From Octopus bimaculoides (taxonomy: Eukaryota), in NCBI RefSeq assembly GCF_001194135.2, contig NC_069002.1, positions 4,817,618-4,873,028 on the forward strand: DNA of 55,411 bases, read 5' to 3'. The translations under genes and the position numbers were made by a program. Shown here in pieces: positions 13,469 to 48,934 of this stretch. The stretch's first letter is position 1. Every line of letters starts with the position of its first letter. The notes below the pieces were generated by a model that saw only the letters and a list, made by a program, of their open reading frames with translations, ran no database searches and had not been told where the DNA came from.

Positions 13469-14057
13469 NNNNNNNNNNNNNNNNNNNNNNNNNNNNNNNN
13501 NNNNNNNNNNNNNNNNNNNNNNNNNNNNNNNNNNNNNNNNNNNNNNNNNNNNNNNNNNNNNNNNNNNNNNNNNNNNNNNNNNNNNNNNNNNNNNNNNNNN
13601 NNNNNNNNNNNNNNNNNNNNNNNNNNNNNNNNNNNNNNNNNNNNNNNNNNNNNNNNNNNNNNNNNNNNNNNNNNNNNNNNNNNNNNNNNNNNNNNNNNNN
13701 NNNNNNNNNNNNNNNNNNNNNNNNNNNNNNNNNNNNNNNNNNNNNNNNNNNNNNNNNNNNNNNNNNNNNNNNNNNNNNNNNNNNNNNNNNNNNNNNNNNN
13801 NNNNNNNNNNNNNNNNNNNNNNNNNNNNNNNNNNNNNNNNNNNNNNNNNNNNNNNNNNNNNNNNNNNNNNNNNNNNNNNNNNNNNNNNNNNNNNNNNNNN
13901 NNNNNNNNNNNNNNNNNNNNNNNNNNNNNNNNNNNNNNNNNNNNNNNNNNNNNNNNNNNNNNNNNNNNNNNNNNNNNNNNNNNNNNNNNNNNNNNNNNNN
14001 NNNNNNNNNNNNNNNNNNNNNNNNNNNNNNNNNNNNNNNNNNNNNNNNNNNNNNNNN
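13469..14057. other. Assembly gap; others at 4341-4705, 42645-43396, 45751-45760, 49371-49380, 52377-52413, 54119-54219
   Basis: runs of N. Confidence 0.99.
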
Positions 14058-14546: not shown

Positions 14547-14661
14547 CTATGTGTAACTCATCATATCAAGTGAAGCCGAGGAGGCTGGCGCTGTACTGTT
14601 GCTGGGTGTTTTCAGACTGTCGTTAACATCTCTCCTGAACACTGACAGATTCTGAGTAAAT
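14547..14661 (-). CDS. XPO7: XPO7 last coding exon [38 protein letters not shown]
   Basis: tttcag| acceptor, conserved FTQNLS.FRR.VNDS.K and terminal DMMS; TAG at 14549-14547; follows a 9.2 kb intron. Confidence 0.95.
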
Positions 14662-17600: not shown

Positions 17601-17841
17601 TTTATTTTGATATAGATTTGATTTGAGGTGTCAGAAAAAGGGGGAAGTGAGTGAGTCTGATTTGTCCCCGCAAAAACATCAAAGTCTTATTTCAAAACAA
17701 AAACGTCAGTTTGAAATTAGTTTCACATTTAAAACCTAGGTTGGATATAAACTGCAGTTATCACGTCTTCCAACACTCCCATGGATCTTTCTGAAAAAAC
17801 AAATAGAGGTATGAATAAGCCATGAACACCAAAAAACTGGG

Positions 17842-17881
<40 letters not shown>

Positions 17882-18048
17882 GAGAGACAGGGGGTACACA
17901 GTATTTCAGATAGTTCATAGCAAGGTACATAATATCATAGAGACATCACACCAGGGGGCGCAGTTAGGGCCATAGGCTTACATCAGCAGTGTACACAGTA
18001 TTACAACACACCAGGGGACATAGTATTAATGATAGATCACAGTGGGAG

Positions 18049-18106
<58 letters not shown>

Positions 18107-18149
18107 TTTTATACATTTCAGCCCTGAGGTTGTGGCCATGCTGGGGCAT

Positions 18150-18188
<39 letters not shown>

Positions 18189-19037
18189 GTATTTACAGAA
18201 ATCACAACAGAGTATACAGTAGGGTACATACTATTGCAAACACATCAAAGCAGGGTACACTGCCAGTATTGCAGATATATCACAATAGCAGAGTTGATAG
18301 AATTACAGACATATATCATGGTAGGGTATATTAGATGTATTGCAGCAGGGTACACAACCAGTATTGCAGACACATCACAACTGAGTACGCCAACAGTACC
18401 ACAGACACATCACAACTGAGTACTTCAATAGTACCGCAGCTGAGTACACCAGCAGTACCACAAACACATTACAGCTTAGACATCAGAGCATGCCACACAA
18501 CCAATATTAAAGACACAGCGTGACATACCATACAGCCTGTACTATGGACACATCACGGCTGGGTACACAGCTAGAATTACACAGATCATGGCTACAGTTA
18601 GGGGACATAGAGACATCACATTTGAGCATAAAGCTACAATTATGAATACATGGAAAGTGGATACATCGAGTACAAAGGAGGGGTAGACATTGTGGGGTGA
18701 GACCGATATAGAAAAAAAAAAAACCACACAAGGTGTTAATCTGTGAAGAAAGAAAGTAGAGTGACCTACAACAGACTCAATAGAATGTAACAGATGGACT
18801 TCTCACCTCTGTGAGCAGGTGAGAAGTTATCTTCAGCAACACTAACAACTACTACAACTGCTACAGATATCACTACCACAACTACTACATCTACTATCAC
18901 AACAATTATTACAACTACCACCACAGCTACCATCCCTACTACCACAGGTCAACTGAATGTTCTGTTCCAAGTAATAATAAGACCTAATATTACAAATTGT
19001 CTCTAAAGTCAGGTTTGTTTCTGTTTGTACCTAAGTT

Positions 19038-19082
<45 letters not shown>

Positions 19083-19319
19083 ACAGGGTGCGATGGGTAA
19101 ATTGTCGCCATTTTATGTTTTTCATTTCACACATGTGCATTATTTGTTTTTGATTTTGTTGACTACACAGTATAATAGGGTCAGTTGGGCACAGTCTGTG
19201 AGAAAAACAGCACCATGACACAATTCACTCTGCCAAAAATTTGAGGCGATATGCTGTATTGCTTGACATTCGCGCCAGAAGCTTCAATACAAACACTTCA
19301 GAGATCTGTGGTGTGTGTG

Positions 19320-19386
<67 letters not shown>

Positions 19387-22300
19387 TTTAGCCATACACA
19401 CTCATCTCTATATATAGCCACGCTAGTCATAGATAGTAACTTTCACAACACATATCTACATTTTAGGCCAAGACCAGTGCTATGAACTGGTTGAAATAAC
19501 AGCCAAATCCCCTACCCACTTAAATCACACCCTATTGCCTTAGTAAAAAAATCAAAAAATCAAGAATACGCTGTATGTTGTAGTCTTTGATATACCTAGG
19601 TCTGCTGAATCAAATTCTAAGACAGGGCTAAACAGAAGCAACAAGTCACATTCGTCTTTTGTTTCCAACCATCTCAGTGTTATAATTGAATGACCTCATT
19701 TAGAACAAGAACCTAAATATACGGACACAGCTGGGGAAATCATTGCTCAGTTGTTAATATTCCATTCTTAACTGTAATAAGGTGCCACAGGAAGCATACT
19801 TCTACCTAGCTGTAAAGAGGGACCACAGTGAGGCACAGACAACCTAATTGTAAAAAGGGACCACAGTGGAGGATACGCAACCCGGCTGTATAGAAGTTGT
19901 ACCCCAGTGAGGTACAACCTTCTTAGCTGTATATAGGGGTCCACAGTGTTTGGCACAGTCCACCTTGCTATATACATAAGGTCAACTAAATTACACTACC
20001 TAGATGTCTAGGAGTATCACAGAGAGGTATTGCGGTACCGCTATTAAGTACAGTTCACCTAGCTGCAAAGAAGGTGCTCAGAATTAAATACATTCTACCA
20101 AACTGAACTGAGGTACCACTAACCCTAATCCACTTAGCTGTTAAGCAATATTACAATGTGGTACTAGTCAACTTAACTGTAAAGTAGTGCCACAATATGG
20201 TACAGTCAACCAAGCTGCAAAGAACTATCAGTCTAGGTAGCTGTAAACAGGTACCACAATGATCTAACAGCTCAATGCTGTAAGCAACAGCAACACTGCA
20301 ATCCAGTGATTTGCAGTGTTGATTTGCAGTCACTTGTGTGCAGAAAGCTAACTGCAAATAGTGCAGCATCCCTACCCAACAGGCGATTTCTTAACCCTTT
20401 CACTGGCTACAGACAACCGAAAGGCTAAGCTTATTACAGTGAAATCCTATTTAGTCGTAGTTTCAAAATAACAAGGTTTGTATCGTTACCATTATTATTT
20501 AATGGCAGAGCAGGAATCAATTTCAACTGTATGGAGAATCTGAAAAACACACAAGAGGAAAAAAAAAGAAGACACAGTTCTTCATTAAATAAATTTAAAT
20601 AAAATGTGAATAAAAAATCATTTTTTTTCTCTACTTTTGGTACAAGGCCAGCAAATTTGAAGGGGAGGGGCAAATCAGTTACATCGACTCCAGTATTTGA
20701 CTGGTACTTTTATTTTACCAACCCAACCCCCAAAAGCAGGAACGAAAGGTAAAGTCGACCTACATAGAATTTGAACCCAGAAATGTAAAGAGATAGATGA
20801 AAGAACGAAAAGCATTTCGTCTGATGCACTAATGACTCTGCCAACATGTCGAGAATTGATGTAAATAATGTTGGGTTTCAAATCTTGGCGCAGCACCTGT
20901 AATTTCAGGGTGGCAGGTAGGTTGATTACATCAACCTCAAATGCTCGTCAGGTACTTGTTTTATTTACCCTGAAAAGATGAAAGATGCCTTTGGTGGAAC
21001 GTGAACTAGAAACATTAAAGATGAGATCAAATGCTGCTAGGTATTTTGTCCAGCGTGTTAACAATTCGGCCAGCTCACCACCTGATTAAAGTGAATAATT
21101 ATTAGTAACTGGAGAACAAAGGTAAAAATTTTGCAGGTAAGGTGTACAATAGCAGTGGCTAAATCCATACCAGACTCAACTAGTAGCTTATTTTATCGAC
21201 CCCTGGACACAAGACCCACAGTTCTAAAGCAGAAGATGGTTGTAGTTGACTGAATCCCAGTACATTACTGGTACACACTTCATTAATTCCAATGGGATAA
21301 AGAATGGCAAAGTCAACTGTGACAGGATTGAACCCACAACCTGGTCGAATGAACCTAAATGCTGTAAATCATTTATAAATACTCTACAGATACTATAACC
21401 ATCAACCATTTACAGGACAGTTCTTTGAATGGCACCATTTTGTTTTGCTCATTTCAACCACCAACACACTATACAACACAAACCCAATCAATACAAGAGA
21501 CAGTCACATCTACACATTACAGCCGCTTGCTCTATACATTATATAGTCATGCAGTTGATTACATTATACAGTCAGTCTATACATTATATAGTCATGCAGT
21601 TGATTACATTATACAGTATCCACAACATCATCATTTAATGTTCACATCCCATGCTGGCATAGGCGCACGGGTTGGATGGTTGGAGAGGATCTGTTGGACC
21701 CAAGGACTGGATGTTGTGCTCCAGCATATCTGCTTTGGAATGGTCTCTACAGGTAGATGTCTTTCCTAATGCCAACCACAGCTGAATGCCTTTCCTAATG
21801 CTAACCCAGGGCAGCCAGCAAGTACCGGCTGCCCCTTTTTTATATTTTTTTTTTTAAATCCATACCACCAGCACTACTGAGGTCAGCATGCAGCCCACAA
21901 GACTACGAACCCCACAGGAAGGGGCAGGTGGCTTGAAGCTAGGGGACAAGGGGTTAAGATATGAGAGAAAGCAGGGGTGGGGTGGAGACAGAGCCGGTTC
22001 TGGCAGAGGAGCTGAATGGTGATTCACATTCAGTAAGGAAAGGAGAGAAAGATCAGTAAGAGTTGTGAAGAGATAGTGAAGATGAGGTGTCCAGGTGGCA
22101 CATCTTAACCTGTCATCCTGTCTATACATTTATAGTCCACATAAGTCTTTATACATTAAACAGGTATAGTCTATACCTGTGTGCAATCACTCAGTCACAC
22201 AAGAATCACAAAAACAACAGAATTTTTTCCTGTTTTCATATATCAAGGATCAGCAACTTCTTTTTGATAAGGTCCACTCGTATATCATATCTCTTACATA

Positions 22301-23570
22301 TAAAAAAATATCCATAATATGGGAGTGTTGGAAGACGTTAAAATGAGGTGCTACTTTGAACTAATTAGATTAATAATTAATGTTAAAGACAAATAAAAAA
22401 GAAAAATTAATACATATATACACATATATATATATATGTGAGTGTAACCAACTCACCTGTTAACGACTTCAGCTTGCAAAATTCTTCAAAGCCAGGTAGA
22501 AGTATTTCATAACAAAACAGTTAGGGGAAGAGTCATACGCTCTCACAGAAGACAATAAGAAATGTATTTAATTACTTGTAATGAGGTCAATGACAGTGCA
22601 TCTTTACTACCACAACTCCTAGCACCTTCTAGTCTATCCAGTACACATTGCACTGATCATATCATCATGAATATATAAATGTGTGTGTGTGTGTGTGTGT
22701 AGGTAGTAAAATAAGGATTTAGATTAAATCGGGTACTTGAAAATGATATGTACCAGGTAGGGTTGGATAAACCTGTGGTTCCGGCCTATGGTTGGTAAAT
22801 ATCAAATAGGCTATTTCTGGTTGTATCAGGTCACTTAAAATATCATATCACAAACTATATTCTTCATCTAACCCCCACCCCACAATGATCAATTTTGTTG
22901 GTCATTCTCCCATTTTGACAGACTTCAGCCACGTCCCTGTTGCATTCTTGGGACGTTCTTTTGTTTGTAAAATTATGTTTCATCTGAAACGGTTTCGGAA
23001 TGCTTCCAAGGTAGTGTTCTTGGCTTACAATGAGAGTGACCTCCCTTCCCTAACAGACAAAATGCGTTTATCATCTCCCTTGATTTTTACTAATGCCAGC
23101 CGACAGCCAGGAACCAGGCAACTTGTTTTTCAGCATTTCACAGTCTGAGAGCCTTAACATTCACACATACAGGCAACTTTGAAAAGCTATGGAAAGATTG
23201 ATCGACATTACATAAATAAATAAACTCTACGATATTTCTGCTCTTTTTTCTCTTCTTCCTGCTTGAATTTCCAAATGTGTAAATGTGTTTGTTCATGTGT
23301 GTAAATATATTTCCTTGACTGTTCTCATACTGGGGCAGCACTGCCCTCAAGAGTATGGCCAATGACACCACCTTCCATTCATTGGTAGGTTCTTAATTCA
23401 GTGACGTCAGGAAAGAGAAAGGTAAAGTTCACCATGGAGGGATTTAAAAATTAAACAATAAATACAAAAAAAAAACCAGTAACCAAATGCCATCAGGTGT
23501 ATTTTGTTCACTTCTGCCAATCTCCCTCTATCTATACATACATACATATATATATGTTTATGCGTGTATG

Positions 23571-23604
<34 letters not shown>

Positions 23605-26600
23605 GTATATGAGAAAAGCTGAAAAAAAAAACCTGGAAATAAAGAGAGAGAGAGAGAGAAAGAGAAAGGAAGACATGATAACAACAAGAAAAATAAACTA
23701 AAAGAACGTGGAGAAAGGAAAAAGGAATCGGACAGATGCCAAATCCAATATTCAATGTTGTTCCTGTTAAACAGAGAGAGAGAGAGGGGGAAGGGAGAAC
23801 TCTCAGTGTAATCTGTAAAATATAAAAAGAAAATGTGATTTATATTGGGTGGGAAAAAAGAAGTGGGCAACAAGGCTAGGTTTACCTGTCTCGATTTTTG
23901 GTAAGTAAAGATCGTTCAATTCCCTCCATCAAGTTCTCAAAACATTGTGCCATGGCTGGCTGTTTGTCTGCAGGTTGGCTGGAAATGATGCTGTCTTTCA
24001 GTTTATGGAAATACTGAAAGAGAATAAGAAGGAAATAAGACAATACTACCAAAATAACAAACTACATTTACAACATTGCCAAAACCTTTATTACCATTGG
24101 GAACACAGTCAATGATGACAATCACCATCACAACCACTGTATTGAATGGCAATGGGGGTCCAGTGGGGGTAAAACAGGAAACAGAGGGATCCAGAGGTAA
24201 AAAAAAAATGGTTGAGAACCACTATTGCACATCACCGCCCCATTACTTTCTCATTTCATTACTGCCCACAAGGGGCTACACACAGAGGGGACAAACAAGG
24301 ACAGACAAACGGATTAAGTCGATTATATCGACCCCAGTGCGTAACTGGTACTTATGTAATCGACCCCGAAAGGATGAAAGGCAAAGTCGACCTTGGCGGA
24401 ATTTGAACTCAGAACGTAAAGACAAACGAAATGCCGCTAAGAATTTCACCCGGCATGCCAACGTTTCTGGCAGCTCGCCCCATTACTTTCTGAGCCACTT
24501 CTACACCTCTCATCTTGTCCCCTGGCTCACCATACTGACATTTCCCAAACCACACCTCCACCTTTCTTCGTCACTCCCTATTTGTACAACTGCTATGATG
24601 CGTTGACCAATTCCAAAGCAACAAACCAAAATTAAATCTACTCACATCTTCATTCAGCAAGATGAGGCCCAGGAGAGGCCGGGACATGGACCACTGATTA
24701 CGACAGTCTTCAAACATGATAATATTTAGAACGGTGGACAACATCTGAAACAGAAGGAAAACAACAGACAGGTGAGGCGAGATCTCTATAAATTACAGTC
24801 ATTTAATTTAATCAAAAATCAAGTGTGGCTGTGTAGTTAAGAAGCTTACTGCCCAACCATGAGGTCTTGGGTTCAGTCCCACAGCATGGCACTTTGGGTA
24901 AGTGTCTTCTACTATAGTATTGTGAATGGATTTAGTAGATGGAAACTGGAAGAAGCCCATCATGTGTATGTGCGTGTCTGTTATGTGTACCCTTGTCTAG
25001 AGATCATGTAATGGTTGCAAATGAGCATCCTTATCATCATACAGGCGAGGTTGTTTGTTACCTGTTTTCCATGAAAAACATTACCTTGCTCTAAAACAGG
25101 TGAGGTTTGGCAACAGGAAGGGCATCCAGCTGTAGAAAATCTGCTTCAACAAATTCCATCTCACCCATGCAAGCATGGAAAAGCGGACATTGGATGACGA
25201 TGATGATGATGATCTAATTAAATACTAATGGGCAACTGCTGGTCTTCCATAAACAAATTTGCCCAGATTTGTGCCTCAGAGTGTAGCTTTCTAGATGCAA
25301 TCCCATGGTCATTCATGACTGAAGGGGATCTTTACCCTTATGTATGTATAACAAGCTTATTTCAGTTACCATCAACCAAATCCAGGTATGTATGTATCTA
25401 TTCATGTATTCACGTATGTATGCATGCATATGACAAGCTTCTTTTAGTTTCCATCAACCAAACCCAATCACAAAACAACAAAGAAATAGTTGATCTACAG
25501 ATAAAACACCCCACCCAAACTTAACTGGTATTTTCATTTAATTTTATTAACTCTGGAAGGATGAAAAACAAAGATTATCTGAACAGAAATTGAAGCACTG
25601 CTAACATAACACACACATATATATAGACATAAGCTAGAAGTTTTCTCACCTGTTGTAAAATTTCTGGATGGACTTCAAGGATTCTGAGGAATGCTTCACT
25701 GTCTCGTATGCTGGTTGGGTGGTTTTTCTTTTTCTTTCGAGTTAGACGTCGAAATAGATATGTAACAATATTGTCAAGTATTGCACAACAGCCTGTACAC
25801 ACCATAGTGTCTAGATATTACAATTAGAAACACAGAACATGTATATAGATATATATATATATATGTAATAACCAAGTATTACATAACCAAATCAGTACAA
25901 ACTATACATACCATAGCGTGATTAGAAATAATAATAATAATAATAATCCTTTCTATTATAAGCACAAGGCCTGAAATTTGGGGGGAGGGGTTAAGTCAAC
26001 TACATTGATCCCAGTATGCAACTGGTACCTAATTTATCAACCCTGAAAGGATGAAAGGCAAAGTCGGCCTCAATTCACAGGCCATCATCATTGTTTTAAG
26101 ATCAATGTTTCCATGCTCATGTGAGCTGCAAAGAATTTTGTTTCGGCAGATTTTCAACAGTCAGATGCCCTCTCTCTCACCAACCCACACCAGTTTCTAG
26201 ATGAGGTAATATTTCCCCAGGGTCAGATCTATGCTGACTGAGGATAAGAAGGGACACTGCTTGCATGACATTGGCATTCATTTCCAACTATCACATGATG
26301 CTAAGAGAAGGAGACAATAACACACACGCAAACAATGGGCTTCTTTCAGTTGCTGCCTAACAAATCCGACCACAAGGCTTTGGTCAGCCCAAGGCTATTG
26401 GTAGAAGACACTTGTCCAAGGAGCCATGCAGTGGCACTGAACCCCAAACCATGTGACTGGGAAGCAAACTTCTTACCACACAGCCATGATATGAGCAACG
26501 ATAGCAAGAAAAAATAATCTAAAAACACAATGTGGTGACCATGTCTTGCTGAAATAATTAACTCTGATGTGGACTAATTAATGAGTTACAGGTCTATGGA

Positions 26601-29600
26601 ACAAATGTTTTATAGTCTAGCCATGTTGCAGAGTGTCCCAGTATGACTGGGTTAATATCAAAACGTGCGTTATAGTTTACAGCCAGCATGCAAAATATTC
26701 TAACAACAACAACACGAACAACATGAACAAAACCTACCTAAAGCAGTTAGTCCCTCAGATATTGTTGAAAGAATGTAGAGAAAGACTTGCGGTTCCAAGT
26801 TGCTGATAAACATCATGTGATCTTGAGCAAGGCATTCTAGCAATGCGTAATAGTTTTGGCTGAGTTTTGGATAATCCTAATATCATAAGAAGAAAAAAAT
26901 TTTCAAATTAAAAAAAAACATCTATAAAACTTGTACAGGTAATATTATGTGTATACTGTACTGCCTCCGCATTCTGGAAATGAAAATAAAAGAAAATGTT
27001 TTTTTTTAAAAATGGCAAGATCAATATTTGAATGTATTGACTGCCACTGACTATTACAGTCACCAATGTATGAAAGAAACTTCTCTTTACTAAGAACTTT
27101 CACAGTCAGAGGGTATCAGTGCTACCGTCTTGGCACAAATTTGAACTGCATCTCGTTTTAGCTAATTTTCTTCCTAAGCAGTTGTGCTCTTTTAGTTACA
27201 TGAATCAACATGTGCTTTATTCTAAATCACTGATATCACACAACTGGTGTGTGATAAACAGTGATATACTGAAAACAAAAAAACATTTGGTATCAAGTAG
27301 TTGTACACACACTTCCTCTCTCTCTCTCACATACTCAGGTCTGATGAAAAAGGAGATCACTTACCAAAAGATCATTCTGTGGTATGGATAATAACAACTT
27401 GACAAACATTGCTAAAGCGTTATCAAGGGCATCATCACCATAAAGCCTGAACACACCAAAATTTACATAGTTTCCACACAGGGCTGCCTTCAACATTGAA
27501 AAACATATGGAAATTCCTTTTAATGTGGGAGACATAGAGTTAAGGATAACACAGTGACAGTTTGATAATTAAATACAAAAGGTATCAGCTTGTGTGAAAC
27601 GTTTACTGGTACCATAAAGGTTAGCAGCTCCAAAGACTATATAAGAAAACATAAAACCTACAGGACACGTTTCATGAAGGCCAAACCCAATACCTCATTT
27701 AACAGCACCCCTGGTCCTAGGCTGCCTTTAGTACTCTGTACTCTTCACCAGTAATTGCAGCCTTTGTAGGTATAGTAGAGATGATCATAATAATAATAAT
27801 AAATGTCCTGATGCAGGACCAGGCAGTGGCTCTCATGGCTTCTGGTCTTAACTGATTATATTGTATGTTGTTTTGTTTTGATACAAAAGATGGGCTACAG
27901 CAAATATTCTGCTCAATACCACAGATTTGCTTGTCAGTTGTTTGACCTTAACCAGTTGAGCATGTCCCTTGGTGGCTGATGATAAGAGCATCGCTGATCA
28001 CGAGCAGAAGTAGTGGGGGAGCATCATAGCCATGTGTTGAGAGGAATTCTTTGGGGTTTGGACAATTCACCAGTGGAAACATGGGTGTTTCGTTCAGCAT
28101 CCTTAAACAAACCTTATTCAGGAATCATTTGAGTGGGATGGGCTACTCGACCTGAAAAAAATTCTAATAGGGCCCCACCTGCAAGGTCATGCACTGTTTA
28201 TCTTGATATAAGATCACCATGTCATGCACTTATGGTTGTGATGCATGTGCCTTGTATACCCTCATCAGATGGGTATACTGGGCTTCATATATTTCTACCC
28301 CAGTGTCACTTTGATGGCATGCATTGCTCTCTCACTCAATAATAATAATAATAATAATAATGATATGACAACAACGACAATGAATGGTGCAGCGACAGAC
28401 AAAAATGCCTTGCAATAATATAGTTACAACCCTTTACATTCCAAGTTCAATTCATGTGAGAGCCAGTTTTGCTTTTACTTCACTAGGGGTTGATTTCAGT
28501 AACAATAACCAAATCCTCTCACAAAATGTTTGATCTTTGAGCATGTGTTACAAAACAATTATTATGAGAAGAAAACAAAGTACCACCTATCCCTATATCA
28601 AGACAGGTTGTAACACAGGGGATCCCTGTCAAACACCATCATGCTCCTAAAGCCGTAAGGTCTATGTAAACTGCAAACAATAATATGCTACAAAAGGGTC
28701 AACTTGGGAAATTATGGTGCAGTTTTTATATTTCACGTGAAAGGATATTTCATAGGGTACAATTGATCCTTGGGAATATCACCAATAGAAAGGATTCGTT
28801 CACCTGGAAATAACAAAGAGATAAAAAAAACGACATTATTTAAAATAAATAAGTTACATATAGGTTTCCATTAAGTAATTAGTATTTGGGGTTTGAATAA
28901 ATGTAACGAAAGCAAAGTTTGAAGGAAATATTAGCCATTTTTCATACTTTCTAGGAGTAATCAAATAGGAAAAAACAGTTGCTCCCCAAGGACACAAATT
29001 GTAAACTGTGTAAGTCTTTATTTCCATTCAAAGTGAACCAGAAATTCATTAAAACAATTTTTTTTCAATCCTGCTTAGATTTTTCACTGTAGATGTATAT
29101 GTTTCATAATTTTTAAATCTCATTTGAAAAATCCTAACCCAAAATTATATGAGTCGCAATTAGATGAGGAGCTGTCCTGATGACTAAATCACTTGATTGT
29201 AAATTTAAATCTTGTGTTGGGCCTCTGACCAAAGCCCAAAACCTCTGCTCACGGTTTGGCTGACAGAAAAATAAGAGAAATTAAAAGGCAGATTGGACTT
29301 CCTACTTCATTGCTGAAGTGTTTAGTGACAGAAGAAAGGTCATCCACGAAACTGGAAGAAAAAACAAAACAACGGCTCCAATAGAACCGTCCCTTTCATG
29401 CAAACATCATAAAATGGAGGAGGAGTGAAAATAAAAAAGACAATAAATAAATAAACAGAATAAACAAATTGAGAGACATTGATGGAATGTTTAAGAGGAA
29501 ATACTCACCATAACTAACAACAATTTTGCTAATTTCTCTAAACAATAACACGCCATTTGGAGAAGAAACATCAAACTGTAACCGCTGTGAGCTGAAAACA

Positions 29601-32600
29601 ACATTCAGACAGGGATTTTGAAAACAAGAAATTTTATTAATTTAAGGAAATTGAATATACAAAAAACAAAAACAGTTAAGATTATAATTTTTCTGAACTA
29701 TTAACCTCTCATCATTATCTCATTATCATAATTTTTATTCAGGTTAATCAAGGACTGGATTCTGATCAATACCACAGACTTGCTTGGCAGTAACCACTTG
29801 ACGTGTCCCTCAGTGGCTGGCAATATGTGTATTTCTGATCATGAGCAGAAGTAGTTAGGGAGCATCATAGCCATATGTTGAGTAGGATTCTTTAGGGTTT
29901 GAATAAAGGTAACAAAAGAAAGGGTTGAAGGAAATATTAGCCAGGGGTAAAAGGGTAAAGACCCTCTTCGGTCATGAATGACCATGGGTTGCACCTAGAA
30001 AGTTCCCCTGGAAGGCACAGGTCCAGACAAGGTTGTTTATGGAAGACTAGCAGTCACCCATGCATACCATCCATCCCTCTGCACACCACTGATATTATCC
30101 AAGGGAAAGGCAAAGGGACCAATACGGCTTGGCACCAGCAACATCACAACTCATTTCTACAGCTGAGTGAACTGGAGCAACGTGAAATAAAGTGTCTTGC
30201 TCAAGAACACAACACACAGACCAGTCCTGGAATTGAACTCACTACCTCATGATTGTGAGCCTGACACTCTAACCACCGAGCCCGAGGTTAATAGTAGGAA
30301 AAGTGATAAACTTAACAACAACTCATTGCAAATTTTTTTTTTAAATGTTTAAATAATAGAAATACTATCGTATTGGTTGAATTTTTTCCTGTTTTTAATA
30401 ATTTTAATATATCATATCTATTATTCAATTCTAATATGGACAACTTGAGAAAAAGTAGGCTGAACAACCTGCACGAATGATCGGTTTACAGTGATCAGAT
30501 GTTAGTGCTGCATACGAGCTCACTTCCCTCCATCAAATCCACAATACCTGTACAGGTGCACAGTGCTGCATACGTCACATACTAAAGTGATCACAACGTG
30601 AGACAACGTGCTTTACACTGCCCGGCCTGGGAATTGAACCTATGCTCACATGAGCGCAACACCCAACCACTAGTCCATGCACCCTCATCTCTAACACTAT
30701 TAGTATTATAGTTAGTAACATACAACAAACATTATTAGAGACCTTAGCCCTTTGAATCTGCAAGTATGCTTTAGCTGGAGTGATTTCAATTGAATGTACC
30801 TCCCTGGAAGACACAAGAGCAGGTAGCCATGTTGTTTTCTGTTTATGACTCACTAAATGACCAAAACATTGTTATTCTCAACAATAAATACAAAAACCAT
30901 GTGGCCGTCCTGTTTTGCGTCTTCCAGGAGTATAGTCAAAAAAAAAAAAAAATCGCATCACTTCCCACTAAAGTATACTTGTGGATTCAAAGGGTCAAAT
31001 CAGTAAGAAACAAGGCATATTAAATTTCAGATTTATGGGAAAGAGAAAGCAACACAGGAGGAGGCATTCATGCCTTTCTCTAAAAGTATTAATAAAATGA
31101 GATAGACAGTTCTGACTGGAAATCAAAACCAGGGATTGAAATTCTTTTTTTTTTTCATTAACGAAGGCTTCCTGTATCTAACATGTTACAGGACCGCATT
31201 ATAACAAGCACATATATTAAACTTATATTTACCGATTCTGAGCCAGCTCAGCCATAAGTTTTAAAACAGGCGTCGTAACAGATGGATCGTGGTACCACAG
31301 TTCAACTGCCCGATGTAATACTGGTGTGTAAGTAGGATAGCTGGTGTTAATTAAGGAGGTGATAACAACATCGTTTCAGTTAAGCAACACTAATTACAAA
31401 CACTGACCTTTGCAACAGAAGAACTTCATTAGAAACAAATGAGTTGAGGATGGACAGGAGTAGTCTTTTTTTTTGTTTTTCTTATTCAACATCAGTAGGT
31501 TACGGCTAGTTGTCTAATGACAGATGTGTTAGAATAAATAGAAGTGGGTTCAGGGCATAAATTAAGAAAAGGATAGTAAATAATGAAAATATTTTTTTAA
31601 TTAATTCTAGTATTTTGTTTCGTTTCATTTAATAATAAATCAAAACAATTTAATGAAAAAACAAAAAAAAACAAAAGGATACATCCAATCAAAATTCATC
31701 ATATAACTAGTTTTGGTATTAAAGGCAAACGCAACACCTCGTAAATCTCGAGCCAGACCAATTAATGACCTCTGCAATGAAAAATAAAAAAAATAAACAA
31801 TATTGAATTTTCTGGCATACAAATCAATGTAGTATATAGTGTAAACATGTAGGTCTAAACATTCAAACATTGTTACTATCTTTCCAAATCATGGAATTCT
31901 TGGTCCTCCCAAAATTGTTTTGGTGAATAAGTCAGCCTACCTTTTTTGGCTGTAAATTTGAGTTGGAAAACTTCACAATGTATACTGGAAAATACAGTAG
32001 TTCAAACAACTATTCAATAATTTTGTATAATGTTACTGCTACAATAAAAAGTACTCAGTGGTTAGAGCATCGTGTTCACAATCAAGAGGTAGTGAGTTCG
32101 ATTCCCGGATCGGGCTGTGTGTTGTGTTCTTCAGCAAGACACTTTATTTCACGTTGCTCCAGTTCACTCAGCTGAAGAAATAAGTTGCAATGTCACTGGT
32201 GCCAAACTGTATTGGCCCCTTTGTCTTTCCCTTGAACAACATCAGTGGCATGGAGAGGAGAGGCTGGTATGCAGGGGCAACTATTGGTTTTCCATAAACA
32301 ACCTTGCCCAGACAGAATATGCACCAGGTTTTACAAAAGTAAGTACTGGGGTCTCGATTTGTTTGACTAAAACCCTTCAAAGTAGAGCTGCAGCATGGGC
32401 TGCAATCCAATGACTGTGACAAACAAAAGATAAAAATATCTCACCTTAGCTTCTTCCATTTTATTTTGGGTGTTTGCATTGGCAAGCATGTTTCCGACTG
32501 CATCAAAAGCAGCTGCAAAGAATAAAGAGAAACGTGAAGTCAGAAAGGGAAAACAGAAACCAAAAGAGCAGGATCCAAACGAAAAGCTTAAAAAATCACA

Positions 32601-35600
32601 CCAAGATCGACTTAACCTTTCGTCCCTTTAGGCTTGCACCAAGAAACAACACCCTAGCATTGCCTCACTGTAATGATACAACTGCAAAAGGAACAGTCTG
32701 CCAATCTAGTTAAAATCCTATGCTTGACTGGCATAGAGCAGGTACCAGATGTTGCTTTCAACAGGTAGAGAGAAAGAGAGAAGCCACTGTGCCTCACTGT
32801 ATCACACTGCCCACCTCAAACTTCTCAGCCCAGAGCGGTCATATAGCTAGGGCTGTTTCCCCCCAATCTCCACCCCATGCAGGCCTGTACAGCTACAAGA
32901 GATGCTGCCCAACCGATACAGGCTGAAGCATGACTTTCCATGGCACCATCACAAGTACTTTTTACATGGCACCATCACTAGTGCTTTTTATATGGCACCA
33001 TTACCAGTAAAAAAAAAACGTGGCACCATCACCAGTGTCCTTGACAAGGCACTGTCACCAGTGCATTTTACATGACACCCGCACCAGTGCTTTCCAGGGG
33101 CAAATGCATGGTCTCGTGTAACTAACAAATAATCCTAAGACAATGACAACAACGGCAAGGCCTAAAGACAATATGAATATACTTACATGTAAGTGGTAAC
33201 ATAAACTGGTCAAACTTCTCCTCGTCTTCACCCAGGTCTACCAGCAGCAACCTCCCAAGCGCCGTGTAGAATGTGGTCCGGCACCTCATGTCTGCCATGA
33301 TATTACCGTTTGTGTTCACTCCCAGGAATGGAAAGTGGTCACTCTATGGAAAGGAATACAGTGTTTGATCAATGCATTTATCATTTTTATAACTAATTAA
33401 TATATAATGAGCAGAAAACTTCAACAAAATATCTCAAAGTACACCAAACATATACATTATATATATATATATATGATTTTTGATGCTGTTTGTATTCACA
33501 TAAACACTCGTAGACCAACATACGCACACATAAATACATAAATATGCATGCAAACATTTATATACATTCGTAGATGTGTACATATATACATAATATAATT
33601 TTGTACATTTGCCTGCCTCCCTCGTGTGTGTGTATGTGGTGTAATGTCCTGTTAATCACGTGATACACAGGGCATATATCCTGGTGTCCCTGCATCATAT
33701 CTGATATATATTCTTTTTCAGCCATCAGAATAACTTGGGTCTTATGAAAGGAAAGCTTTATATTACTTAGAATATATATAAAACAAACTTAAGAAAATGC
33801 TTCAGACAGGGTTAAAATGGTTTAAAAGACTATCAAGGTTGGAGGTTTAGTTGGTTTTCTTTCTTGGTCCACCCCTGTGCCTCCTGTGAGTTAATTCAGC
33901 TCATCACAGCAAATTATATAAAACTGATAGAATGGCAGAGGTTCTACAATGTAATCAGTAACACTGTCACCCAGCAAGACAGAATGGCAGGTGTTCTATG
34001 ACATAGCCACTTACCAAATAACAATTAAACCCCAACAATAGGCCTGTTGCTTTATTTAAATTTTATAACACTATTTACATAAAACTTTTATTAGTAAAAT
34101 TAGTTCAGCGTTAATATTAGTTTCAAATTCTGGTACAAGGCCAGCAATTCCGGGAGGGGGGGGGGAGAGTAAGTTGATTACATTGATAGCCCCCACCCAC
34201 TCACTGTTTAACTGGGGCTTATTCTATCAACCTCAAAAGGATGAGAGACAAAGTCAACCTTGGTGGAATTTGAACTCAGAACGTGAAGACAGACAAAATG
34301 CTGCTAAGCGGTTTGCCTAGTGCTCTAACGATTCTGCCAGCTTACCACTTTTAGTTCAGAGTCAATATTAGAAAAGCAGGGAATAGTAGTAGTAGCAGCA
34401 GTAAAGTAGATTAAAAAAGCAAGAGAGACTCACTGTGTGGTTATTGAGCATGAGTTGTACGGCTTCTAATTTGACTAGTTTGCGGCCACTACTGTAACCA
34501 ACTGATAACTCACTCAATAACAGAAGTGTTTTCGTGATAATCTGTTCACTCCGACCCCAATATTTCAAGTTTGTAATGCTGCAGGAACAGGAATAAGTAA
34601 AATAATAAGAGAAAAAAAAAATGACAAACATAGCAAATATTATTAAATAGACAAACAACTTCATTCTGGATTGTATCAAAGATAAAAATACACATTGATA
34701 TCAAATACTTGAAACATTTATCATGCTACTACAAACATCTACAAAACAATAAAGTAAAATATATTTGTTAATTGCTTACATTTTTCCTATAAAAACACTT
34801 AATACCATTGATTCGTCGCTCAACCTTAAAACTTCAGAAAGTCTTCGGTAAACCTGTAGAATAAACAATAAAAAGGTAAGAACTAATAAATAAACACACA
34901 CAAATCACTAAGTAGTTTCACATCTTAGAGATTATAAAACGAAATTGATTGAGAACACTGTGTAACACTATTTTTGTCCTTGGGTAGCAAATGTTATTTC
35001 CTATTTGATTACCTTTAGAAAGTATGTAAAATGGCTAATATTTCCTTTAACTGTTACTTTTGTTACATTTTTTCAAGCCCAAAGAATCCCTGTCAATGCT
35101 TGGCTGGATTAAATAAGTACCAGTCATGCACTAGGGTCGATGTAATCAACTTAATCCCTTTGTCTCTCCTTGTTTGTCCCCTCTATGTTTAGCCCCTTGT
35201 GGGCAATAAAGAAATAAATATTATCAACAACAGTAATAACAATTATAAAAAATAAAAAAATGTGCCTGACCTTTGAAGTTTTCTGTACTTGATCACCAAC
35301 ATAAATCTTCCGAAACTGTTCAAAGAAACTCAAGATGGCAAGTTCTAGTTTTTCACAACCACTCTGTTGTAAACGAGAGTCGGTGAGATTCATCAACTGC
35401 AGTACTCTGTAATCACATTATAAACACCGTCAATATTATGAAGATGCCTTTAAACAGTTATCTAACTGCTTACAGCTTGCTACTACATACTTACAACACA
35501 CCCACCCCCTGGAAAGCAAATTGTCTAACTCAACAAATGTTCACATAACAATATAGACAATAATTTATCAACGTGTTCAATATGGTTTTTTTTATCTTTT

Positions 35601-37321
35601 ACTTGTTTCAGTTATTAGACTTCAGCTCTGCTGGAGCGCCACCTTGAAGAATTTTTAGTCAAATGAATTGACTCCAGCACTTATTCTGTCAGTCTCTTTG
35701 GCCAAACTACTAAGTTACGGTGATGTAAACACACCAGCACAGGTTGTCAAATGGTATTAGGGAACAAACACAAAGACACACACACATGATGATGATCTTT
35801 TAGTTTCCATCAAGCAAATCCATTCACAAAGCTTTGGTCAGCCAAGGCTATAGCAGAAGACACTTGCTTAAAGTTCCATGCAGTGTGACTGAACCCAGAG
35901 CCAAAGAACACAATGGTTAATGTAATCCTAGCTACACTATGAAAAAATAAAGATGGTTACGACTGAACTGTGAAACAAAAATGAAATGATTTACTATCAA
36001 TGAAACCAAAAGAAGCAGAACAACATTAAAACAATGAGGGGGGATAGAATGGGAGGAGAGGTGGGAAATAAGGGGAGACTGTGTGTGGAGTAAAAGAAAT
36101 GTACTTACCGACATACAAGCTCTCCATCCATAGCATCATGTTCATCTGTACTGGCAAACGATACCCTTCCACCAACAACAGCACCAATTATATACACTAA
36201 CCATGTTAGACGGCCTGGTGGAGAAATAGAAACAAGTCGTTATTAAGCATAGTATAACTTTATATGAAGCACTGAGATAAAACACTTTCCAAAAGTCAAA
36301 CAAGACCTGTCCCTGTATTCAGGAAGGCCCTCCAGCTGTAGAAAACATGCCAGAACAGACAATGGAGCCTTGTGTAGCCCCAGGACTTACCAGCTCTGGT
36401 CAAACTATCCATCTCATGCCAGCATGGAAAAGGGACAGTTAAGGTTTGCATGCAGTTTTCTTCCTCCTTTGGTTTGTTTTTGAATTAAAAATGTATCGGT
36501 TAGGGTCCAGTTTCAATCCCAAATTAGGATCACCCCACTTGTGTCGCTTTTTGAGAAAGACCCAAACATCAGGAAAACCTAGATTCTCCTCTTTACTACC
36601 ATTCCCACAGACATGACAAACAGAGAATGTAAGGAATCTGGTGTCATCAGAGCCACTCACCTTGTTGAACTGCTACTTCTACACTTTGTCCGCCAGATGA
36701 AATCAGTTCTTGGTACCGCTGAGCAGCTTCATCAAACAGCTGCACCAGTAATGCACAGGTTTTCTCGTACTCACACCGTCCTATAGTTGATAGCTGCAAT
36801 CAGAGAGAAACCAGGTACAATGAAACTGCACAACTGACACCTTCAGAAATATATTCGTTTATTCTTTTATTTGTTTCGGTCATTCGACTGCAGCCATGCT
36901 GGAGCACTGCCTTTAAGGATTTTAGTCAAACAAATTTAAAAAAAAATTTTTTTAAAGCCTAGTACTTATTCTGTTGGTCTCTTTTGCCAAACCGCTAGGT
37001 TACAGGGATGTAAACACACACAACACTGGTTGTCAAGCACTGTGGGGTAGGGGGAGATCAAATATACACACACACACGATGGCCTTCTTTTAGTTTCTGT
37101 CTTCCAAATCCACTCTCAAGGCTTTGGTCAGCCCGAAGCACTTGCCCAAGGTGCCAAACAATGGGGCTGAACCTGCTTTTCAAGTAAGGAATCACTTATT
37201 CTATACATATGTGAGGGCAACAAACCAGTTTATGATTTGTTCACAGGTGATATAAAAAAACTACACCACCACTTGTAGCTTGGCGATTTCCAAAGAAACA
37301 TAAATGTAAACACTTACACAC

Positions 37322-37355
<34 letters not shown>

Positions 37356-37433
37356 GTACATATGACAGGTTTCTTTCAGTTTCTGTTTACCAAAACCACT
37401 TACAAGGCCTTGGCTAGCTGACTGGTTAGCTGG

Positions 37434-37516
<83 letters not shown>

Positions 37517-40500
37517 TCCAAGTGAATGTGCACTGCATGTGCCAGCACACACACAAACACTGTATGCATAAGCATCGATTCAAACCAAACATCCATTGCT
37601 CCACTCTCATCTGTTTATCTCTATCTGCACCAGTTTCGGAAATAAGAAATTACAAACAGATCAACTCACCTGATCTAGTTGTTGAGTTACCATCCCATTA
37701 TCTTCTAAAGGATCTTCAAGGCCCTCACTGGAATTAAAAGACAAAAACATGTCCAATTATAAGCATTCATGTTTACATATTTGTGGAAAAAAACAATAAT
37801 GAAAAATGCTTTTCTTTAAGGCCTAAAAACTTGAAATCTTAAACCAAACTTTAAGACCCTGCTTTGGTCAAGAATTACCATGGGATTGCACCTAGAAAGT
37901 TTCCCCTCTGAGGTCCAAGCCCAGGCAAAGTTGTTTTAGGAAGACCAGCAGTCACCCATGCATAACAGCCTCCCCTCTCCAGACCACCAATGTTATCCAT
38001 GGAAAAGGCAAAGGCTGATAGAGCTTGGCACCTGTGACGTCACAATTCATTTCTACAGCTGAGTAAACTGGAGCAACATGAAATAAAATGTCTTGCACAA
38101 GAATACAACACATAGCCCAGTCTGGGAATCGAACTCACTACCTCGTGATTGTGAGCCTGATGCTCTAAGCACTGAGGCCATGTGCCTTCACCTTCCACCA
38201 TACACATGTACTACAACAATAAAGAAAGACTTTAAAACCTACACATCTTTAAATTAATTTAAGCATGAAACCCATAATTCTAAGTGAAGGGGTCAGTTGA
38301 TACCAATGACCTCAGTACGTGACTGCTACTCTATTTTATCAAGCCCCAAAAGTATGAAAAGTAAAGTCAACTTCAGTGGGATTTGAACTCAGAAAATAAA
38401 GAACCAGAATGAATACTGCAAAGTATTTTTTTTTTTTCAACACTAATGAATAATTCTGCCCATCCACCACCGTCAAATAAAGAAAGAGCTATCTTACGTG
38501 AGGGCCACATGGACAGATTCCATCCTTGAGGTAATATAGGCTTTAGTGACTTCTGGTGTGTAGGTTTCTAAGAGATGAGGTTCTGAAGCTTTCACATAAG
38601 GAACTGAAGCCACCATACGCTGCCACAAACTCAATAAATAATGTATGCTGTTTGGTGCGCATTGCCACATCTGCAGAAATAGATCACAAACAAATATTGT
38701 AAACATCAGAAAAGGACTGAGAGTCACATATCATCATCATCATCATCATCTAACAATTTTTCCATGCTTGCATGGGTCAAACAGAATTTGTTGAAGCAGA
38801 TTTACTAAAGTCAGATGTCACCAACCCTCACCTGTTTCCAGGTGAGATCGTATTTCCCATGGCCAGACATTTTTTCCACAGAATACTGGAAACAAAGAAC
38901 ACTGCTGGTATGACAGTGAGGCTTGTTTACAACCATCAAACACCAGCACAAGCATATGTACACACACACACACACACACAAAGGGTTTCTTTCAGATTCT
39001 GACAACCAAATCTACTTGCAATGTTCTGGTTGACTTGAGGCTTCACCCAAGGTGTCATGCAGTGGGACTGAACCGCAAGACCACATGGTTAGGAAGCACA
39101 TAGCCAAAAATTCATGTACGGTATAGAGAATAATACAAAGAAAGTGAAACAGTAAATGAATAGTTTAAAGAGGGAGGGGTGTCCCTACATGAGCTGTTGG
39201 CAAATTTCAAAAAAGTATGGAAGCTTTGAAGGATACAGAGTCCTGACAGCTAACAACTGATATCTTTATAATGACCAGACTTCTCTGGTTTTAAAGTTGA
39301 GCAATTGAAACAGGAACAAAAAGATACTTACACGTAAACTAGTTACTGTAAATTCAGCAATGAGTTTTATAATTTCAGGATAGTTATCTACTTTTACAAG
39401 TTCCCCTAGCTGATAATTTGATTTCAAGCGGGCAAGCAACCGACAAAATTCATGGTAGTTATTAGGATGTGACAAACTCTGTAAAGAGAAAGAGAATATA
39501 ATAATTAAGAAATGACAAACTATGTATGGAGAAATGTAACATGGTTTAGGTTTTTAAGGGTTTCATTATAATTTAGGGTCGCAAAATTTGAATTTTCAAA
39601 TTAAAAATGAACAAAAAAAAAAAAAAAACATTTTTGTAAAAGGGCAAATATTTATCACTGAATAGTTATTGTTTCAGCATCATAACTACAACACACAAAT
39701 AAATATTACAAATATGAAAGAAACTGAGAGAAAGGATAAGACAAAGACAGAATCTTTAGCATGATGGATTCTAGATTCTGTCTGGAAATGTTTGTCAAGG
39801 TGTGGATGTTGATGTCTGCCCGTAGTGAGATAAACACATGGTGAGCTAGCTGTTGTACATGTACCACACACACACAATCAAAACTAGAGGTAAGGTCCAA
39901 AGACATGACTAGAGGTACTTATTTTATCAACCGTGAAAGGATGAAAGGCAGAGTCGACCTCAGCGGAATTTGAACTCAGAACATAATCATTTTACCCAGC
40001 ATGGTACCGATTCTGCCAGCGCACTGTCTTGATTATTATTACAATGTTCATGCTATCTTATAGTTGAGAACTCTACTTAGTTGCCACTTTTAGCAATGTA
40101 CTTCAACAATGAACCAATGAGACAACAGGCAGAAGTACTGACAAGGCACAGGTTCTTACTATGGTCCATACTCAAGTATCTTAGCACTCCTGGCTAAAAA
40201 GTTTTATTAATGAGGTTTAAAGGAGAAGATGGCAACTTACCTGTGGATGTTCTAAAATGCGTCGTACACCAGCAACAAGATGATTAAGAAACTGGGCCCT
40301 TTCATCATTATTGAACAATGAACGCCGAACTGATGCCACTTGCACAAGACAAGAGAGAGCCTACAATAGAAAGAGAATATAATAAATGTGTGTGTTTGAA
40401 TGTGTGTGTGAGTGCACAAGTATATGTGAGTGTATGTATGTAATGTATGTTATATACAAACAGAGAGACGGGCAGATAGACAATGAGACTAGATGGGTCA

Positions 40501-48894: not shown

Positions 48895-48934
<40 letters not shown>

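What the first reader, a model, noticed from the sequence alone, without database searches (positions are those of the whole stretch)
27525..28748. AT-AC minor-spliceosome intron in exportin-7
Seen: the exon ending ...CCT ATG AA is followed by ATATCCTTTC, and the next exon is preceded by TCCTTAAC-tctatgtctcc-CAC with no AG. Splicing AT...AC restores YPMK|LKGISICFS. Established: these are U11/U12 consensus signals, and AT-AC introns are rare and often missed by gene predictors. Read-through gives K-Y-P-F-T-stop almost at once. Inference: retention could act as a rate-limiting or NMD switch on a nuclear export receptor.
Basis: partly seen in the sequence, partly recalled or inferred. Interest (0 to 1): 0.72.

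Follow-up and report, generated by a model that had tools for sequence, protein, structure and literature searches.

The report
Conserved AT-AC minor intron in exportin-7
The flagged 1,224-base stretch is a genuine minor-spliceosome (U12-type, AT-AC) intron in the exportin-7 gene; it is ancient, shared with snails, clams and worms, and lost in vertebrates and insects. It is a well-known kind of feature that mainly matters because it breaks automatic gene models.

Summary
Observation confirmed. On the minus strand, exon 24 of an exportin-7 gene ends ...CCT ATG AA (28749). The next 1,224 nt (28748..27525) start ATATCCTTT and end TCCTTAAC-N12-AC. Exon 25 starts at 27524.

Only this AT-AC pair gives the gapless YPMK|LKGISICF join. 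Every in-frame GT-AG alternative deletes at least 14 conserved residues. With it, 29 exons assemble into a 1,096-aa open frame with Pfam TPR_XPO7 and IBN_N.

The same codon position and phase carry U12 signals in Elysia crispata (AT-AA), Solemya velum and Lamellibrachia satsuma (both AT-AC). They also do so in three divergent metazoan contigs (AT-AC, GT-AG, AT-AG). A sponge gene model reads through it as K-Y-P-F. Three GenBank annotations split the gene exactly here.

Vertebrate XPO7 and RANBP17, and insects, have a fused exon at this site. The catalogued vertebrate minor introns lie elsewhere.

The proposed retention/NMD switch is untested; only the early stop codon is shown. "Cephalopod" could not be verified, and the closest relatives are molluscs and an annelid. 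This is a new member of a known kind, of modest interest.

The parts
27525..28748 (-). U12-type AT-AC intron (intron 24 of the exportin-7 model), 1,224 nt, phase 2
   Evidence: It is the only splice pair that gives a gapless match to homologs and an open 1,096-aa frame. The orthologous introns are shown.
28740..28748 (-). 5' splice site ATATCCTTT (U11/U6atac recognition element)
   Evidence: The identical 9-mer sits at the same codon position in Elysia, Solemya, Lamellibrachia and L009.
27539..27546 (-). Branch-point sequence TCCTTAAC (U12 snRNA pairing site); the branch A lies 15 nt from the last intron base
   Evidence: Orthologs carry TCCTTAAC, (A/G)CCTTAAC or TCCTTGAC 9-13 nt from the 3' end.
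27525..27526 (-). 3' terminal dinucleotide AC; no AG between the branch site and the exon
28749..28803 (-). Exon 24 (55 nt), encoding (G)[17 protein letters not shown](K); preceded by ttatttccAG
27365..27524 (-). Exon 25 (160 nt), encoding (K)[53 protein letters not shown]; followed by GTAAGT
28733..28735 (-). In-frame TGA reached if the intron is retained (K-Y-P-F-T-stop); this removes the last 262 aa
31341..31682 (-). Second U12-type intron of the same gene. It is the GT-AG subtype, 342 nt, phase 2: TGGAT|GTATCCTTTT ... CTCCTTAAT-taacaccAG, at FDWI|YP. It is the ortholog of the catalogued vertebrate XPO7/RANBP17 minor intron.
14547..49212 (-). Exportin-7 gene: 29 coding exons (exon 2 through the stop codon) and 28 introns, of which 26 are U2-type GT-AG and 2 are U12-type

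Best explanation
This is a constitutive U12-dependent (minor-spliceosome) intron of the AT-AC subtype, lying between exons 24 and 25 of a single-copy-type exportin-7 (XPO7/RanBP16) gene.

Inferred mechanism, from the established model of U12-type splicing:
- The U11 snRNP, and later U6atac, pair with the 5' element AUAUCCUUU.
- U12 snRNA pairs with UCCUUAAC and bulges the branch adenosine.
- The 3' site is chosen by its short distance from the branch (15 nt here) rather than by a polypyrimidine tract and AG, so AC is used.
- Removal joins AA|A into a Lys codon and restores ...[12 protein letters not shown]...

The intron is ancient. It occupies the same codon and phase in a gastropod, a bivalve, an annelid and three divergent metazoan contigs. 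Its terminal dinucleotides drift among them (AT-AC, AT-AA, AT-AG, GT-AG) while the U12 core motifs stay. It was deleted precisely in vertebrates, before the XPO7/RANBP17 split, and in insects.

What is shown: the sequence signals, the frame requirement and the positional conservation. What is inferred: actual use of the minor spliceosome in this organism.
For: Signals:
- The intron starts ATATCCTTT and has TCCTTAAC 15 nt from a terminal AC, with no AG nearby.

Frame requirement:
- Exhaustive enumeration of in-frame donor/acceptor pairs shows that only AT(28748)-AC(27525) gives the gapless 71-aa match. A 2-nt slide gives the same mRNA. All in-frame GT-AG pairs delete at least 14 conserved residues.
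- With this splice, 29 exons give an uninterrupted 1,096-aa frame, 69.7% identical to exportin-7-like P0142, with TPR_XPO7 and IBN_N domains.

Orthologous genomic loci at the same codon and phase:
- Elysia crispata: ATATCCTTT...ACCTTAAC...AA
- Solemya velum: ATATCCTTT...TCCTTAAC...AC
- Lamellibrachia satsuma: ATATCCTTT...GCCTTAAC...AC
- L007: ATATCCTCC...TCCTTGAC...AC
- L008: GTATCCTAC...TCCTTGAC...AG
- L009: ATATCCTTT...TCCTTGAC...AG

Annotation and transcript evidence:
- GenBank gene models are split into about 845-aa and about 255-aa halves exactly here in all three named genomes.
- The Ephydatia muelleri model reads QLK-YPF..., a read-through of ATATCCTT.
- Transcript-derived proteins of other molluscs are seamless across K|L: P0241, P0268 and the Arion sequence P0242.
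- The chance of the motif placement is about 3e-9.
- Molluscs are reported to keep most minor introns (PMC11347168).
Against: - No RNA evidence from the window's own organism was available. Its proteins are absent from the searchable collections.
- No minor-spliceosome snRNA gene lies in the window, so the presence of the machinery is inferred from literature on molluscs, not shown.
- The branch-to-3' distance of 15 nt is at the long end of what I recall as the preferred range, although the orthologs span 9-13 nt.
- The taxa of L007-L009 could not be assigned.
Confidence: 0.93

Rival explanations
1. Regulatory reading: the intron is spliced slowly or conditionally. Retention then throttles exportin-7 output, through nuclear detention or through nonsense-mediated decay triggered by the early stop codon.
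For: Retention gives a stop after 5 codons, five exon junctions upstream of the last exon. The gene carries two U12-type introns 2.6 kb apart, so its output would be doubly dependent on minor-spliceosome activity. Tissue-dependent retention of some minor introns is reported in mouse and human (PMC6717393).
Against: Nothing in the sequence distinguishes this intron from a constitutively spliced one, and its signals are near-perfect consensus. The same paper reports that 467 minor introns showed no retention in any of the eleven mouse tissues (105 more only inconsistently) and that minor splicing can be efficient. An early stop codon on retention is true of almost any intron. Precise loss of the intron in vertebrates and insects argues against an indispensable regulatory role.
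Confidence: 0.12
2. A U2-type (major-spliceosome) AT-AC intron, or use of nearby cryptic GT-AG sites, rather than U12-dependent splicing.
For: A few AT-AC introns are known to be U2-dependent (my own knowledge). A GT lies 12 nt inside the intron (28736) and an AG lies 7 nt inside exon 25 (27517).
Against: The 5' element is ATATCCTTT, not the ATAAGT-like form of U2-type AT-AC introns. A consensus U12 branch site sits at the correct distance. All in-frame GT-AG combinations delete 14 or more conserved residues, or insert YPFT and delete 26. Orthologs keep the U12 core motifs while the terminal dinucleotides vary, which is the behaviour expected of U12-type introns.
Confidence: 0.03
3. A recent lineage-specific intron gain (for example a transposon-derived insertion), or an assembly or pseudogene artefact, that happens to carry U12-like ends.
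For: Vertebrates and insects have no intron here. The intron contains a dispersed repeat and a roughly 540-nt segment flanked by (ATT)n.
Against: The same site, phase and U12 motifs are present in a gastropod, a bivalve, an annelid and three divergent metazoan contigs, with unrelated intron interiors and lengths of 249-3,280 nt. The surrounding gene is an intact 1,096-aa frame. The repeats are internal and do not form the splice sites.
Confidence: 0.01

Closest known systems
Catalogued vertebrate minor introns of XPO7 and RANBP17 (MIDB; Olthof et al. 2019, PMC6717393)
   Same: The gene family is the same and is already listed as minor-intron-containing, with two minor introns per mouse gene in Table S1. 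One of them (5' site GAT|GTATCCTAA in XPO7, GAT|GTATCCTTA in RANBP17) is orthologous to the window's other U12 intron at 31682..31341. That intron reads TGGAT|GTATCCTTTT at FDWI|YP.
   Different: The flagged AT-AC intron is at a third site. In human RANBP17 (P0356), vertebrate XPO7 (P0058, eel L010) and insects, the exon runs uninterrupted through ...YP(M/L)KLKGIS.... Conversely, the vertebrate AT-AC intron at LNDLSIG|Y (eel: GG|ATATCCTTTT) is absent from the window, Elysia, Lamellibrachia and L008.
Classical U12-type AT-AC introns (5' /ATATCCTT, branch TCCTTAAC, removed by U11/U12/U4atac/U6atac)
   Same: It has a perfect 9-nt 5' element and a perfect 8-nt branch motif. The branch-to-3' distance is short, there is no AG and no strong polypyrimidine tract, the phase is non-zero, and the neighbouring introns are ordinary U2-type.
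   Different: Nothing differs structurally. Dependence on the minor spliceosome is inferred, not measured.
U2-type AT-AC introns (rare, major spliceosome)
   Same: The terminal dinucleotides are AT and AC.
   Different: Those introns lack the ATATCCTT and TCCTTAAC elements (my own knowledge). This intron has both.

Membership tests
U12-type (minor-spliceosome) intron, AT-AC subtype | 5' splice site matching /RTATCCTT immediately after the exon | tested here: met
   AA|ATATCCTTT at 28748..28740
U12-type (minor-spliceosome) intron, AT-AC subtype | Branch-point motif TCCTTRAC about 8-20 nt upstream of the 3' end, without dependence on a polypyrimidine tract and AG | tested here: met
   TCCTTAAC at 27546..27539. 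The branch A is 15 nt from the terminal C, there is no AG in between, and the terminal dinucleotide is AC.
U12-type (minor-spliceosome) intron, AT-AC subtype | Splicing at these ends restores the reading frame and collinearity with orthologous proteins | tested here: met
   It is the only gapless in-frame solution. The full model is 1,096 aa with no stop.
U12-type (minor-spliceosome) intron, AT-AC subtype | Orthologous introns at the same position retain U12-type signals | tested here: met
   Six other genomic loci were compared, three of them from named species in two phyla.
U12-type (minor-spliceosome) intron, AT-AC subtype | Spliced junction observed in RNA of this organism | not testable with these tools
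   No sequence from the window's species is present in the protein or contig collections. Only transcripts of other molluscs show the seamless K|L junction.
U12-type (minor-spliceosome) intron, AT-AC subtype | Removal depends on U11/U12/U4atac/U6atac snRNPs, and the host has a minor spliceosome | not testable with these tools
   There is no snRNA gene in the window. Literature states that mollusc orthologs of human minor introns are mostly minor (PMC11347168).
Exportin-7 (XPO7 / RanBP16) family | Importin-beta N-terminal domain plus exportin-7-type TPR/HEAT region, with full-length collinearity to annotated exportin-7 | tested here: met
   PF03810 at 51.5 bits and PF25795 TPR_XPO7 at 363 bits. 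The model is 69.7% identical over 1,088 aa to exportin-7-like of Pollicipes.
Ortholog of a catalogued vertebrate XPO7/RANBP17 minor intron | Same codon position as a minor intron listed for human or mouse XPO7 or RANBP17 | tested here: not met
   Vertebrate exons are contiguous across this site. The vertebrate minor introns map to FDW(I/M)|YP and SIG|Y.

The most novel reading that the evidence does not exclude
Invertebrate exportin-7 carries two U12-type introns only three exons apart: FDWI|YP, and the flagged YPMK|LKG site that vertebrates have lost. Its expression could therefore be tightly coupled to minor-spliceosome activity, so that conditional retention of the AT-AC intron (stop after five codons) acts as a dosage switch on a nuclear export receptor. 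The comparative data alone also make this site a compact natural series of U12 subtype switching (AT-AC, AT-AA, AT-AG, GT-AG) followed by clean intron loss.
Probability: 0.1. Interest if true: 0.5.

Novelty: new member of a known kind. Interest (0 to 1): 0.28.

Why it matters
**Annotation.** This intron systematically breaks exportin-7 gene models. Three GenBank genomes split the gene into two proteins here, one sponge model reads through it, and one spider model appears to skip around it. Ortholog sets and protein databases for invertebrate XPO7 are therefore contaminated with truncated or chimeric entries.

**Evolution.** The XPO7/RANBP17 family turns out to have at least three U12 intron sites with complementary loss patterns. 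This one is retained in lophotrochozoans and divergent metazoans but lost in vertebrates, which usually are the best keepers of minor introns. Its orthologs show four different terminal dinucleotide pairs with constant core motifs.

**Function.** Nothing beyond the generic consequence of retention is shown.

Tried and rejected
**Searches for the window's own species**
- Looked for the window's own exon-25 ORF in public assemblies, to find the species and transcripts. It is not on record.
- Two protein searches found no hit above 84-94% local identity, so the species is absent from the collections and 'cephalopod' cannot be checked.

**Searches that returned nothing**
- PDB sequence search with the spliced peptide: no hit.
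- Rfam scan of the whole window: no RNA family, and so no minor snRNA genes.
- Literature searches for XPO7 with 'minor intron', for 'U12-type intron' with 'cephalopod', and for 'exportin 7' with 'AT-AC' found nothing specific.
- Pfam scan of eight long ORFs elsewhere in the window: nothing.
- No tandem repeats of note around the intron.

**Hypothesis tested and rejected**
- I hypothesised that the intron is the known RANBP17 U12 intron 'following exon 20' (PMC4506483). Human RANBP17 genomic ORFs are contiguous across the site, so this was rejected. That intron matches the window's 31682..31341 intron instead, by its 5' sequence GAT|GTATCC.

**Loci and taxa that could not be resolved**
- Genomic loci could not be fetched for the Ephydatia (P0209), Oculina (P0300) and Tauraco (P0270) models.
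- Assigning L007-L009 to taxa by similarity failed. They are roughly equidistant (49-72% identity) from the sponge, mollusc, barnacle and human references, so I do not call them sponges.
- Truncated models that start at MLKAAL also occur in a beetle and a spider, so that pattern alone is not diagnostic.

Full report
**1. What is in the sequence**

The gene lies on the minus strand.
- Exon 24 spans 28803..28749. It is 55 nt, preceded by ttatttccAG, and ends ...TTG TAC CCT ATG AA.
- The next bases are ATATCCTTTCACGTGA.
- 1,224 nt downstream the sequence reads gttaTCCTTAACtctatgtctcccAC. This is followed by A TTA AAA GGA ATT TCC ATA TGT TTT TCA..., which runs to ...CTT TTG|GTAAGT at 27365/27364.
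- Joining 28749 to 27524 gives [18 protein letters not shown]|[53 protein letters not shown].
- Read-through gives K-Y-P-F-T-stop.

**2. Is it more than chance?**

ATATCCTT and TCCTTAAC each occur twice in the 55-kb window, as expected by chance. Motif counts therefore say nothing; placement does.
- From the window's base composition, the chance of ATATCCTTT at a fixed exon end, TCCTTAAC 8-16 nt before a fixed exon start, and a terminal AC is about 1e-10 per junction. That is about 3e-9 for the gene's 28 junctions.
- I enumerated every in-frame donor/acceptor pair within 50-300 nt of the two exon ends (GT-AG, GC-AG, AT-AC and rarer types).
- Only AT(28748)-AC(27525) reproduces the 71-residue gapless alignment. 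Sliding both ends by 2 nt gives the same mRNA.
- Each in-frame GT-AG pair removes 14 or more conserved residues, or inserts YPFT and removes 26.

**3. The gene**

- tblastn with a full-length homolog (P0142, exportin-7-like of the barnacle Pollicipes) maps exons from 49203 to 14580.
- I resolved every junction and assembled 29 coding exons (49212..14547) into a 1,096-aa frame with no internal stop.
- This protein is 69.7% identical to P0142 over 1,088 aa with 6 gaps.
- It carries Pfam IBN_N and TPR_XPO7, the latter at 363 bits.
- Only the first, short coding exon is missing.
- Of the 28 introns, 26 are ordinary GT-AG introns with GTAAGT- or GTGAGT-like donors and pyrimidine-rich acceptors.
- The other two are U12-type: the flagged AT-AC intron, and a GT-AG intron at 31682..31341 (see section 6).

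**4. Related sequences**

Proteins similar to the spliced peptide are called exportin-7 by their sources. Many are short ORFs called on genomic contigs, which makes them informative about exon structure.

*Species without an intron here.* In vertebrate-type XPO7 (P0058), insects (P0125-P0128) and human RANBP17 (P0356, from a 196-Mb NCBI contig), the ORF runs uninterrupted through ...YP(M/L)KLKGIS... It is bounded by the neighbouring introns. These species have no intron at this site.

*ORFs that break here.* In another set of ORFs, homology stops exactly before LKG.
- In some, the residue before LKG is T (ACN, so the intron ends in AC).
- In others it is R (AGR, so the intron ends in AG), or K (AAR, so it ends in AA).
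- These often have S-L-T or F-L-N a few codons upstream, which are translations of TCCTTAAC.

*Genomic DNA for three named species.* All three have an intron after the second base of the same Lys codon.
- Elysia crispata (gastropod): AA|ATATCCTTT...ACCTTAAC-catcatcAA|G, 1,733 nt.
- Solemya velum (bivalve): AA|ATATCCTTT...TCCTTAAC-cttgatttcAC|A, 3,280 nt.
- Lamellibrachia satsuma (annelid): AA|ATATCCTTT...GCCTTAAC-tagtctctAC|A, 1,350 nt.

*Three environmental metazoan contigs show the same.*
- L007: ATATCCTCC...TCCTTGAC...AC, 361 nt.
- L008: GTATCCTAC...TCCTTGAC...AG, 249 nt.
- L009: ATATCCTTT...TCCTTGAC...AG, 1,512 nt.
- These three are about equally distant from sponge, mollusc, barnacle and human exportin-7. 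I could not name their taxa, but they are clearly not close relatives of the window's organism.

*Gene-model evidence.*
- The Ephydatia muelleri (sponge) model Em0013g826a reads ...VYQLK-YPFDCVEC...-KLKGVS. This is what translation through AA|ATATCCTTT produces.
- A Trichonephila (spider) model jumps from ...NYG to ISICF. A predictor forced onto GT-AG sites would do this, but the evidence is only suggestive.

*Transcript-derived proteins.* Sequences from other molluscs (oyster-like P0241, P0268, and the Arion sequence P0242) are seamless across K|L.

*Conclusion.* The intron position is old, at least as old as the mollusc-annelid ancestor and probably much older. The U12 core motifs are maintained while the terminal dinucleotides vary, and the intron has been lost cleanly several times.

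**5. Annotation consequence**

- In Elysia, Lamellibrachia and Solemya, the deposited annotations split exportin-7 into an upstream model of about 845 aa and a downstream model of about 255 aa that starts at the first Met of exon 25. The split lies exactly at this intron.

**6. Comparison with what is catalogued**

- XPO7 and RANBP17 are already listed as minor-intron-containing genes. MIDB Table S1 lists two minor introns each for mouse Xpo7 and Ranbp17.
- Table S2 gives the 5' site GAT|GTATCCTAA with branch TTCCTTAGC for XPO7, and GAT|GTATCCTTA for RANBP17 (PMC6717393).
- A U12 signal 'following exon 20' of RANBP17 is also described in PMC4506483.
- In the eel XPO7 locus (L010), the two minor introns are TGGAT|GTATCCTTTC at FDWM|YP and GG|ATATCCTTTT at LNDLSIG|Y. 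The exon through YALKLKGIS is contiguous.
- The window has the FDWI|YP intron as a U12-type GT-AG intron: 31682..31341, TGGAT|GTATCCTTTT...CTCCTTAAT-taacaccAG, 342 nt.
- Elysia, Lamellibrachia, Solemya, L007 and L008 have it too.
- The window, Elysia, Lamellibrachia and L008 have no intron at SVG|Y.

The family therefore has three U12 sites. The flagged intron is the one that vertebrates lack, so it is not the ortholog of any catalogued human or mouse minor intron. No paper in the library mentions exportin 7 together with AT-AC.

**7. How it most likely works**

- It is a constitutive U12-dependent intron. Recognition of AUAUCCUUU by U11/U6atac and of UCCUUAAC by U12, with the 3' site set by distance from the branch, is established knowledge that I have applied to this sequence. 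It is an inference, not a measurement.
The only fact behind it is the early stop codon, which is generic to retained introns.
- The signals are near consensus. The cited mouse and human survey found that 467 minor introns showed no retention in any of the eleven mouse tissues, and that minor splicing can be efficient.
- Repeated clean loss of the intron also argues against an essential regulatory role.

**8. Verdict**

- The structural interpretation is supported at high confidence (0.93).
- The functional inference is untested (about 0.1).
- Source organism: the closest relatives are molluscs and an annelid (75-79% identity across the compared exons). 'Cephalopod' is unverified.
- Novelty: a new member of a known kind.
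- Interest is modest. The value lies in correcting gene models and in a tidy example of U12 intron evolution.

Noticed in passing
window 31341-31682 (minus strand): A second U12-type intron in the same gene, of the GT-AG subtype and 342 nt long: TGGAT|GTATCCTTTT ... CTCCTTAAT-taacaccAG, between ...YMMNFDW(I) and YPTYTPVLH. Its 5' site matches the catalogued human and mouse XPO7/RANBP17 minor intron (GAT|GTATCC...). It is conserved in Elysia, Lamellibrachia, Solemya, the eel, L007 and L008.
   Followed up: yes
L010 (Anguilla anguilla XPO7) about 8532; window 34434-34578: Vertebrate XPO7 has a different AT-AC U12 intron at LNDLSIG|Y (GG|ATATCCTTTT). The window, Elysia, Lamellibrachia and L008 have a continuous exon there. 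L007 has a U2-type GT intron at that same position (GG|GTGAGCC).
   Followed up: partly
L001, L005, L006, L010 gene tables: Deposited annotations split exportin-7 into two models at the AT-AC intron in Elysia, Lamellibrachia and Solemya. The eel gene is split into three models. One of those breaks coincides with an apparent frameshift at about 12418-12483 of L010, not with an intron.
   Followed up: partly
window 27906-28060 and 29759-29901: A dispersed repeat of about 150 nt (77% identity, same orientation) lies inside the AT-AC intron and again in the intron after exon 22. Inside the AT-AC intron, (ATT)n runs at 27781-27802 and 28339-28360 bracket a segment of about 540 nt. This suggests a SINE-like or other mobile insertion within the intron, away from the splice signals.
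   Followed up: partly
proteins P0100, P0116 and relatives: A group of insect-like genomic ORFs (97% identical to the ant Camponotus in this exon) starts the exon at ...PLQ|MYPLKLKG. This places an intron four codons upstream of the U12 site (between DQ and MYP), apparently U2-type with a pyrimidine tract and CAG. It could be an independent intron or a shifted one.
   Followed up: no
window 42645-43396, 13469-14057, 4341-4705 and smaller runs: Assembly gaps (runs of N) are present. One lies inside the intron after exon 7, so that intron's length (2,092 nt) is uncertain. A 10-nt gap at 49371-49380 lies just upstream of exon 2, where the missing first coding exon would be sought.
   Followed up: no
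window 14662-23885 (minus strand): The last intron is 9.2 kb, far longer than the other 27 (142-2,092 nt). It contains long ORF-like stretches with no Pfam match, and many (CA)n/(TA)n microsatellites occur across the window.
   Followed up: partly
proteins P0347 (Rhincodon RANBP17-like) and P0234 (Trichonephila exportin-7): Both annotated models skip the segment that corresponds to exon 24 and part of exon 25. The spider case may reflect the same non-canonical intron in chelicerates. The shark case is unexplained, because mammalian RANBP17 has a fused exon here.
   Followed up: no
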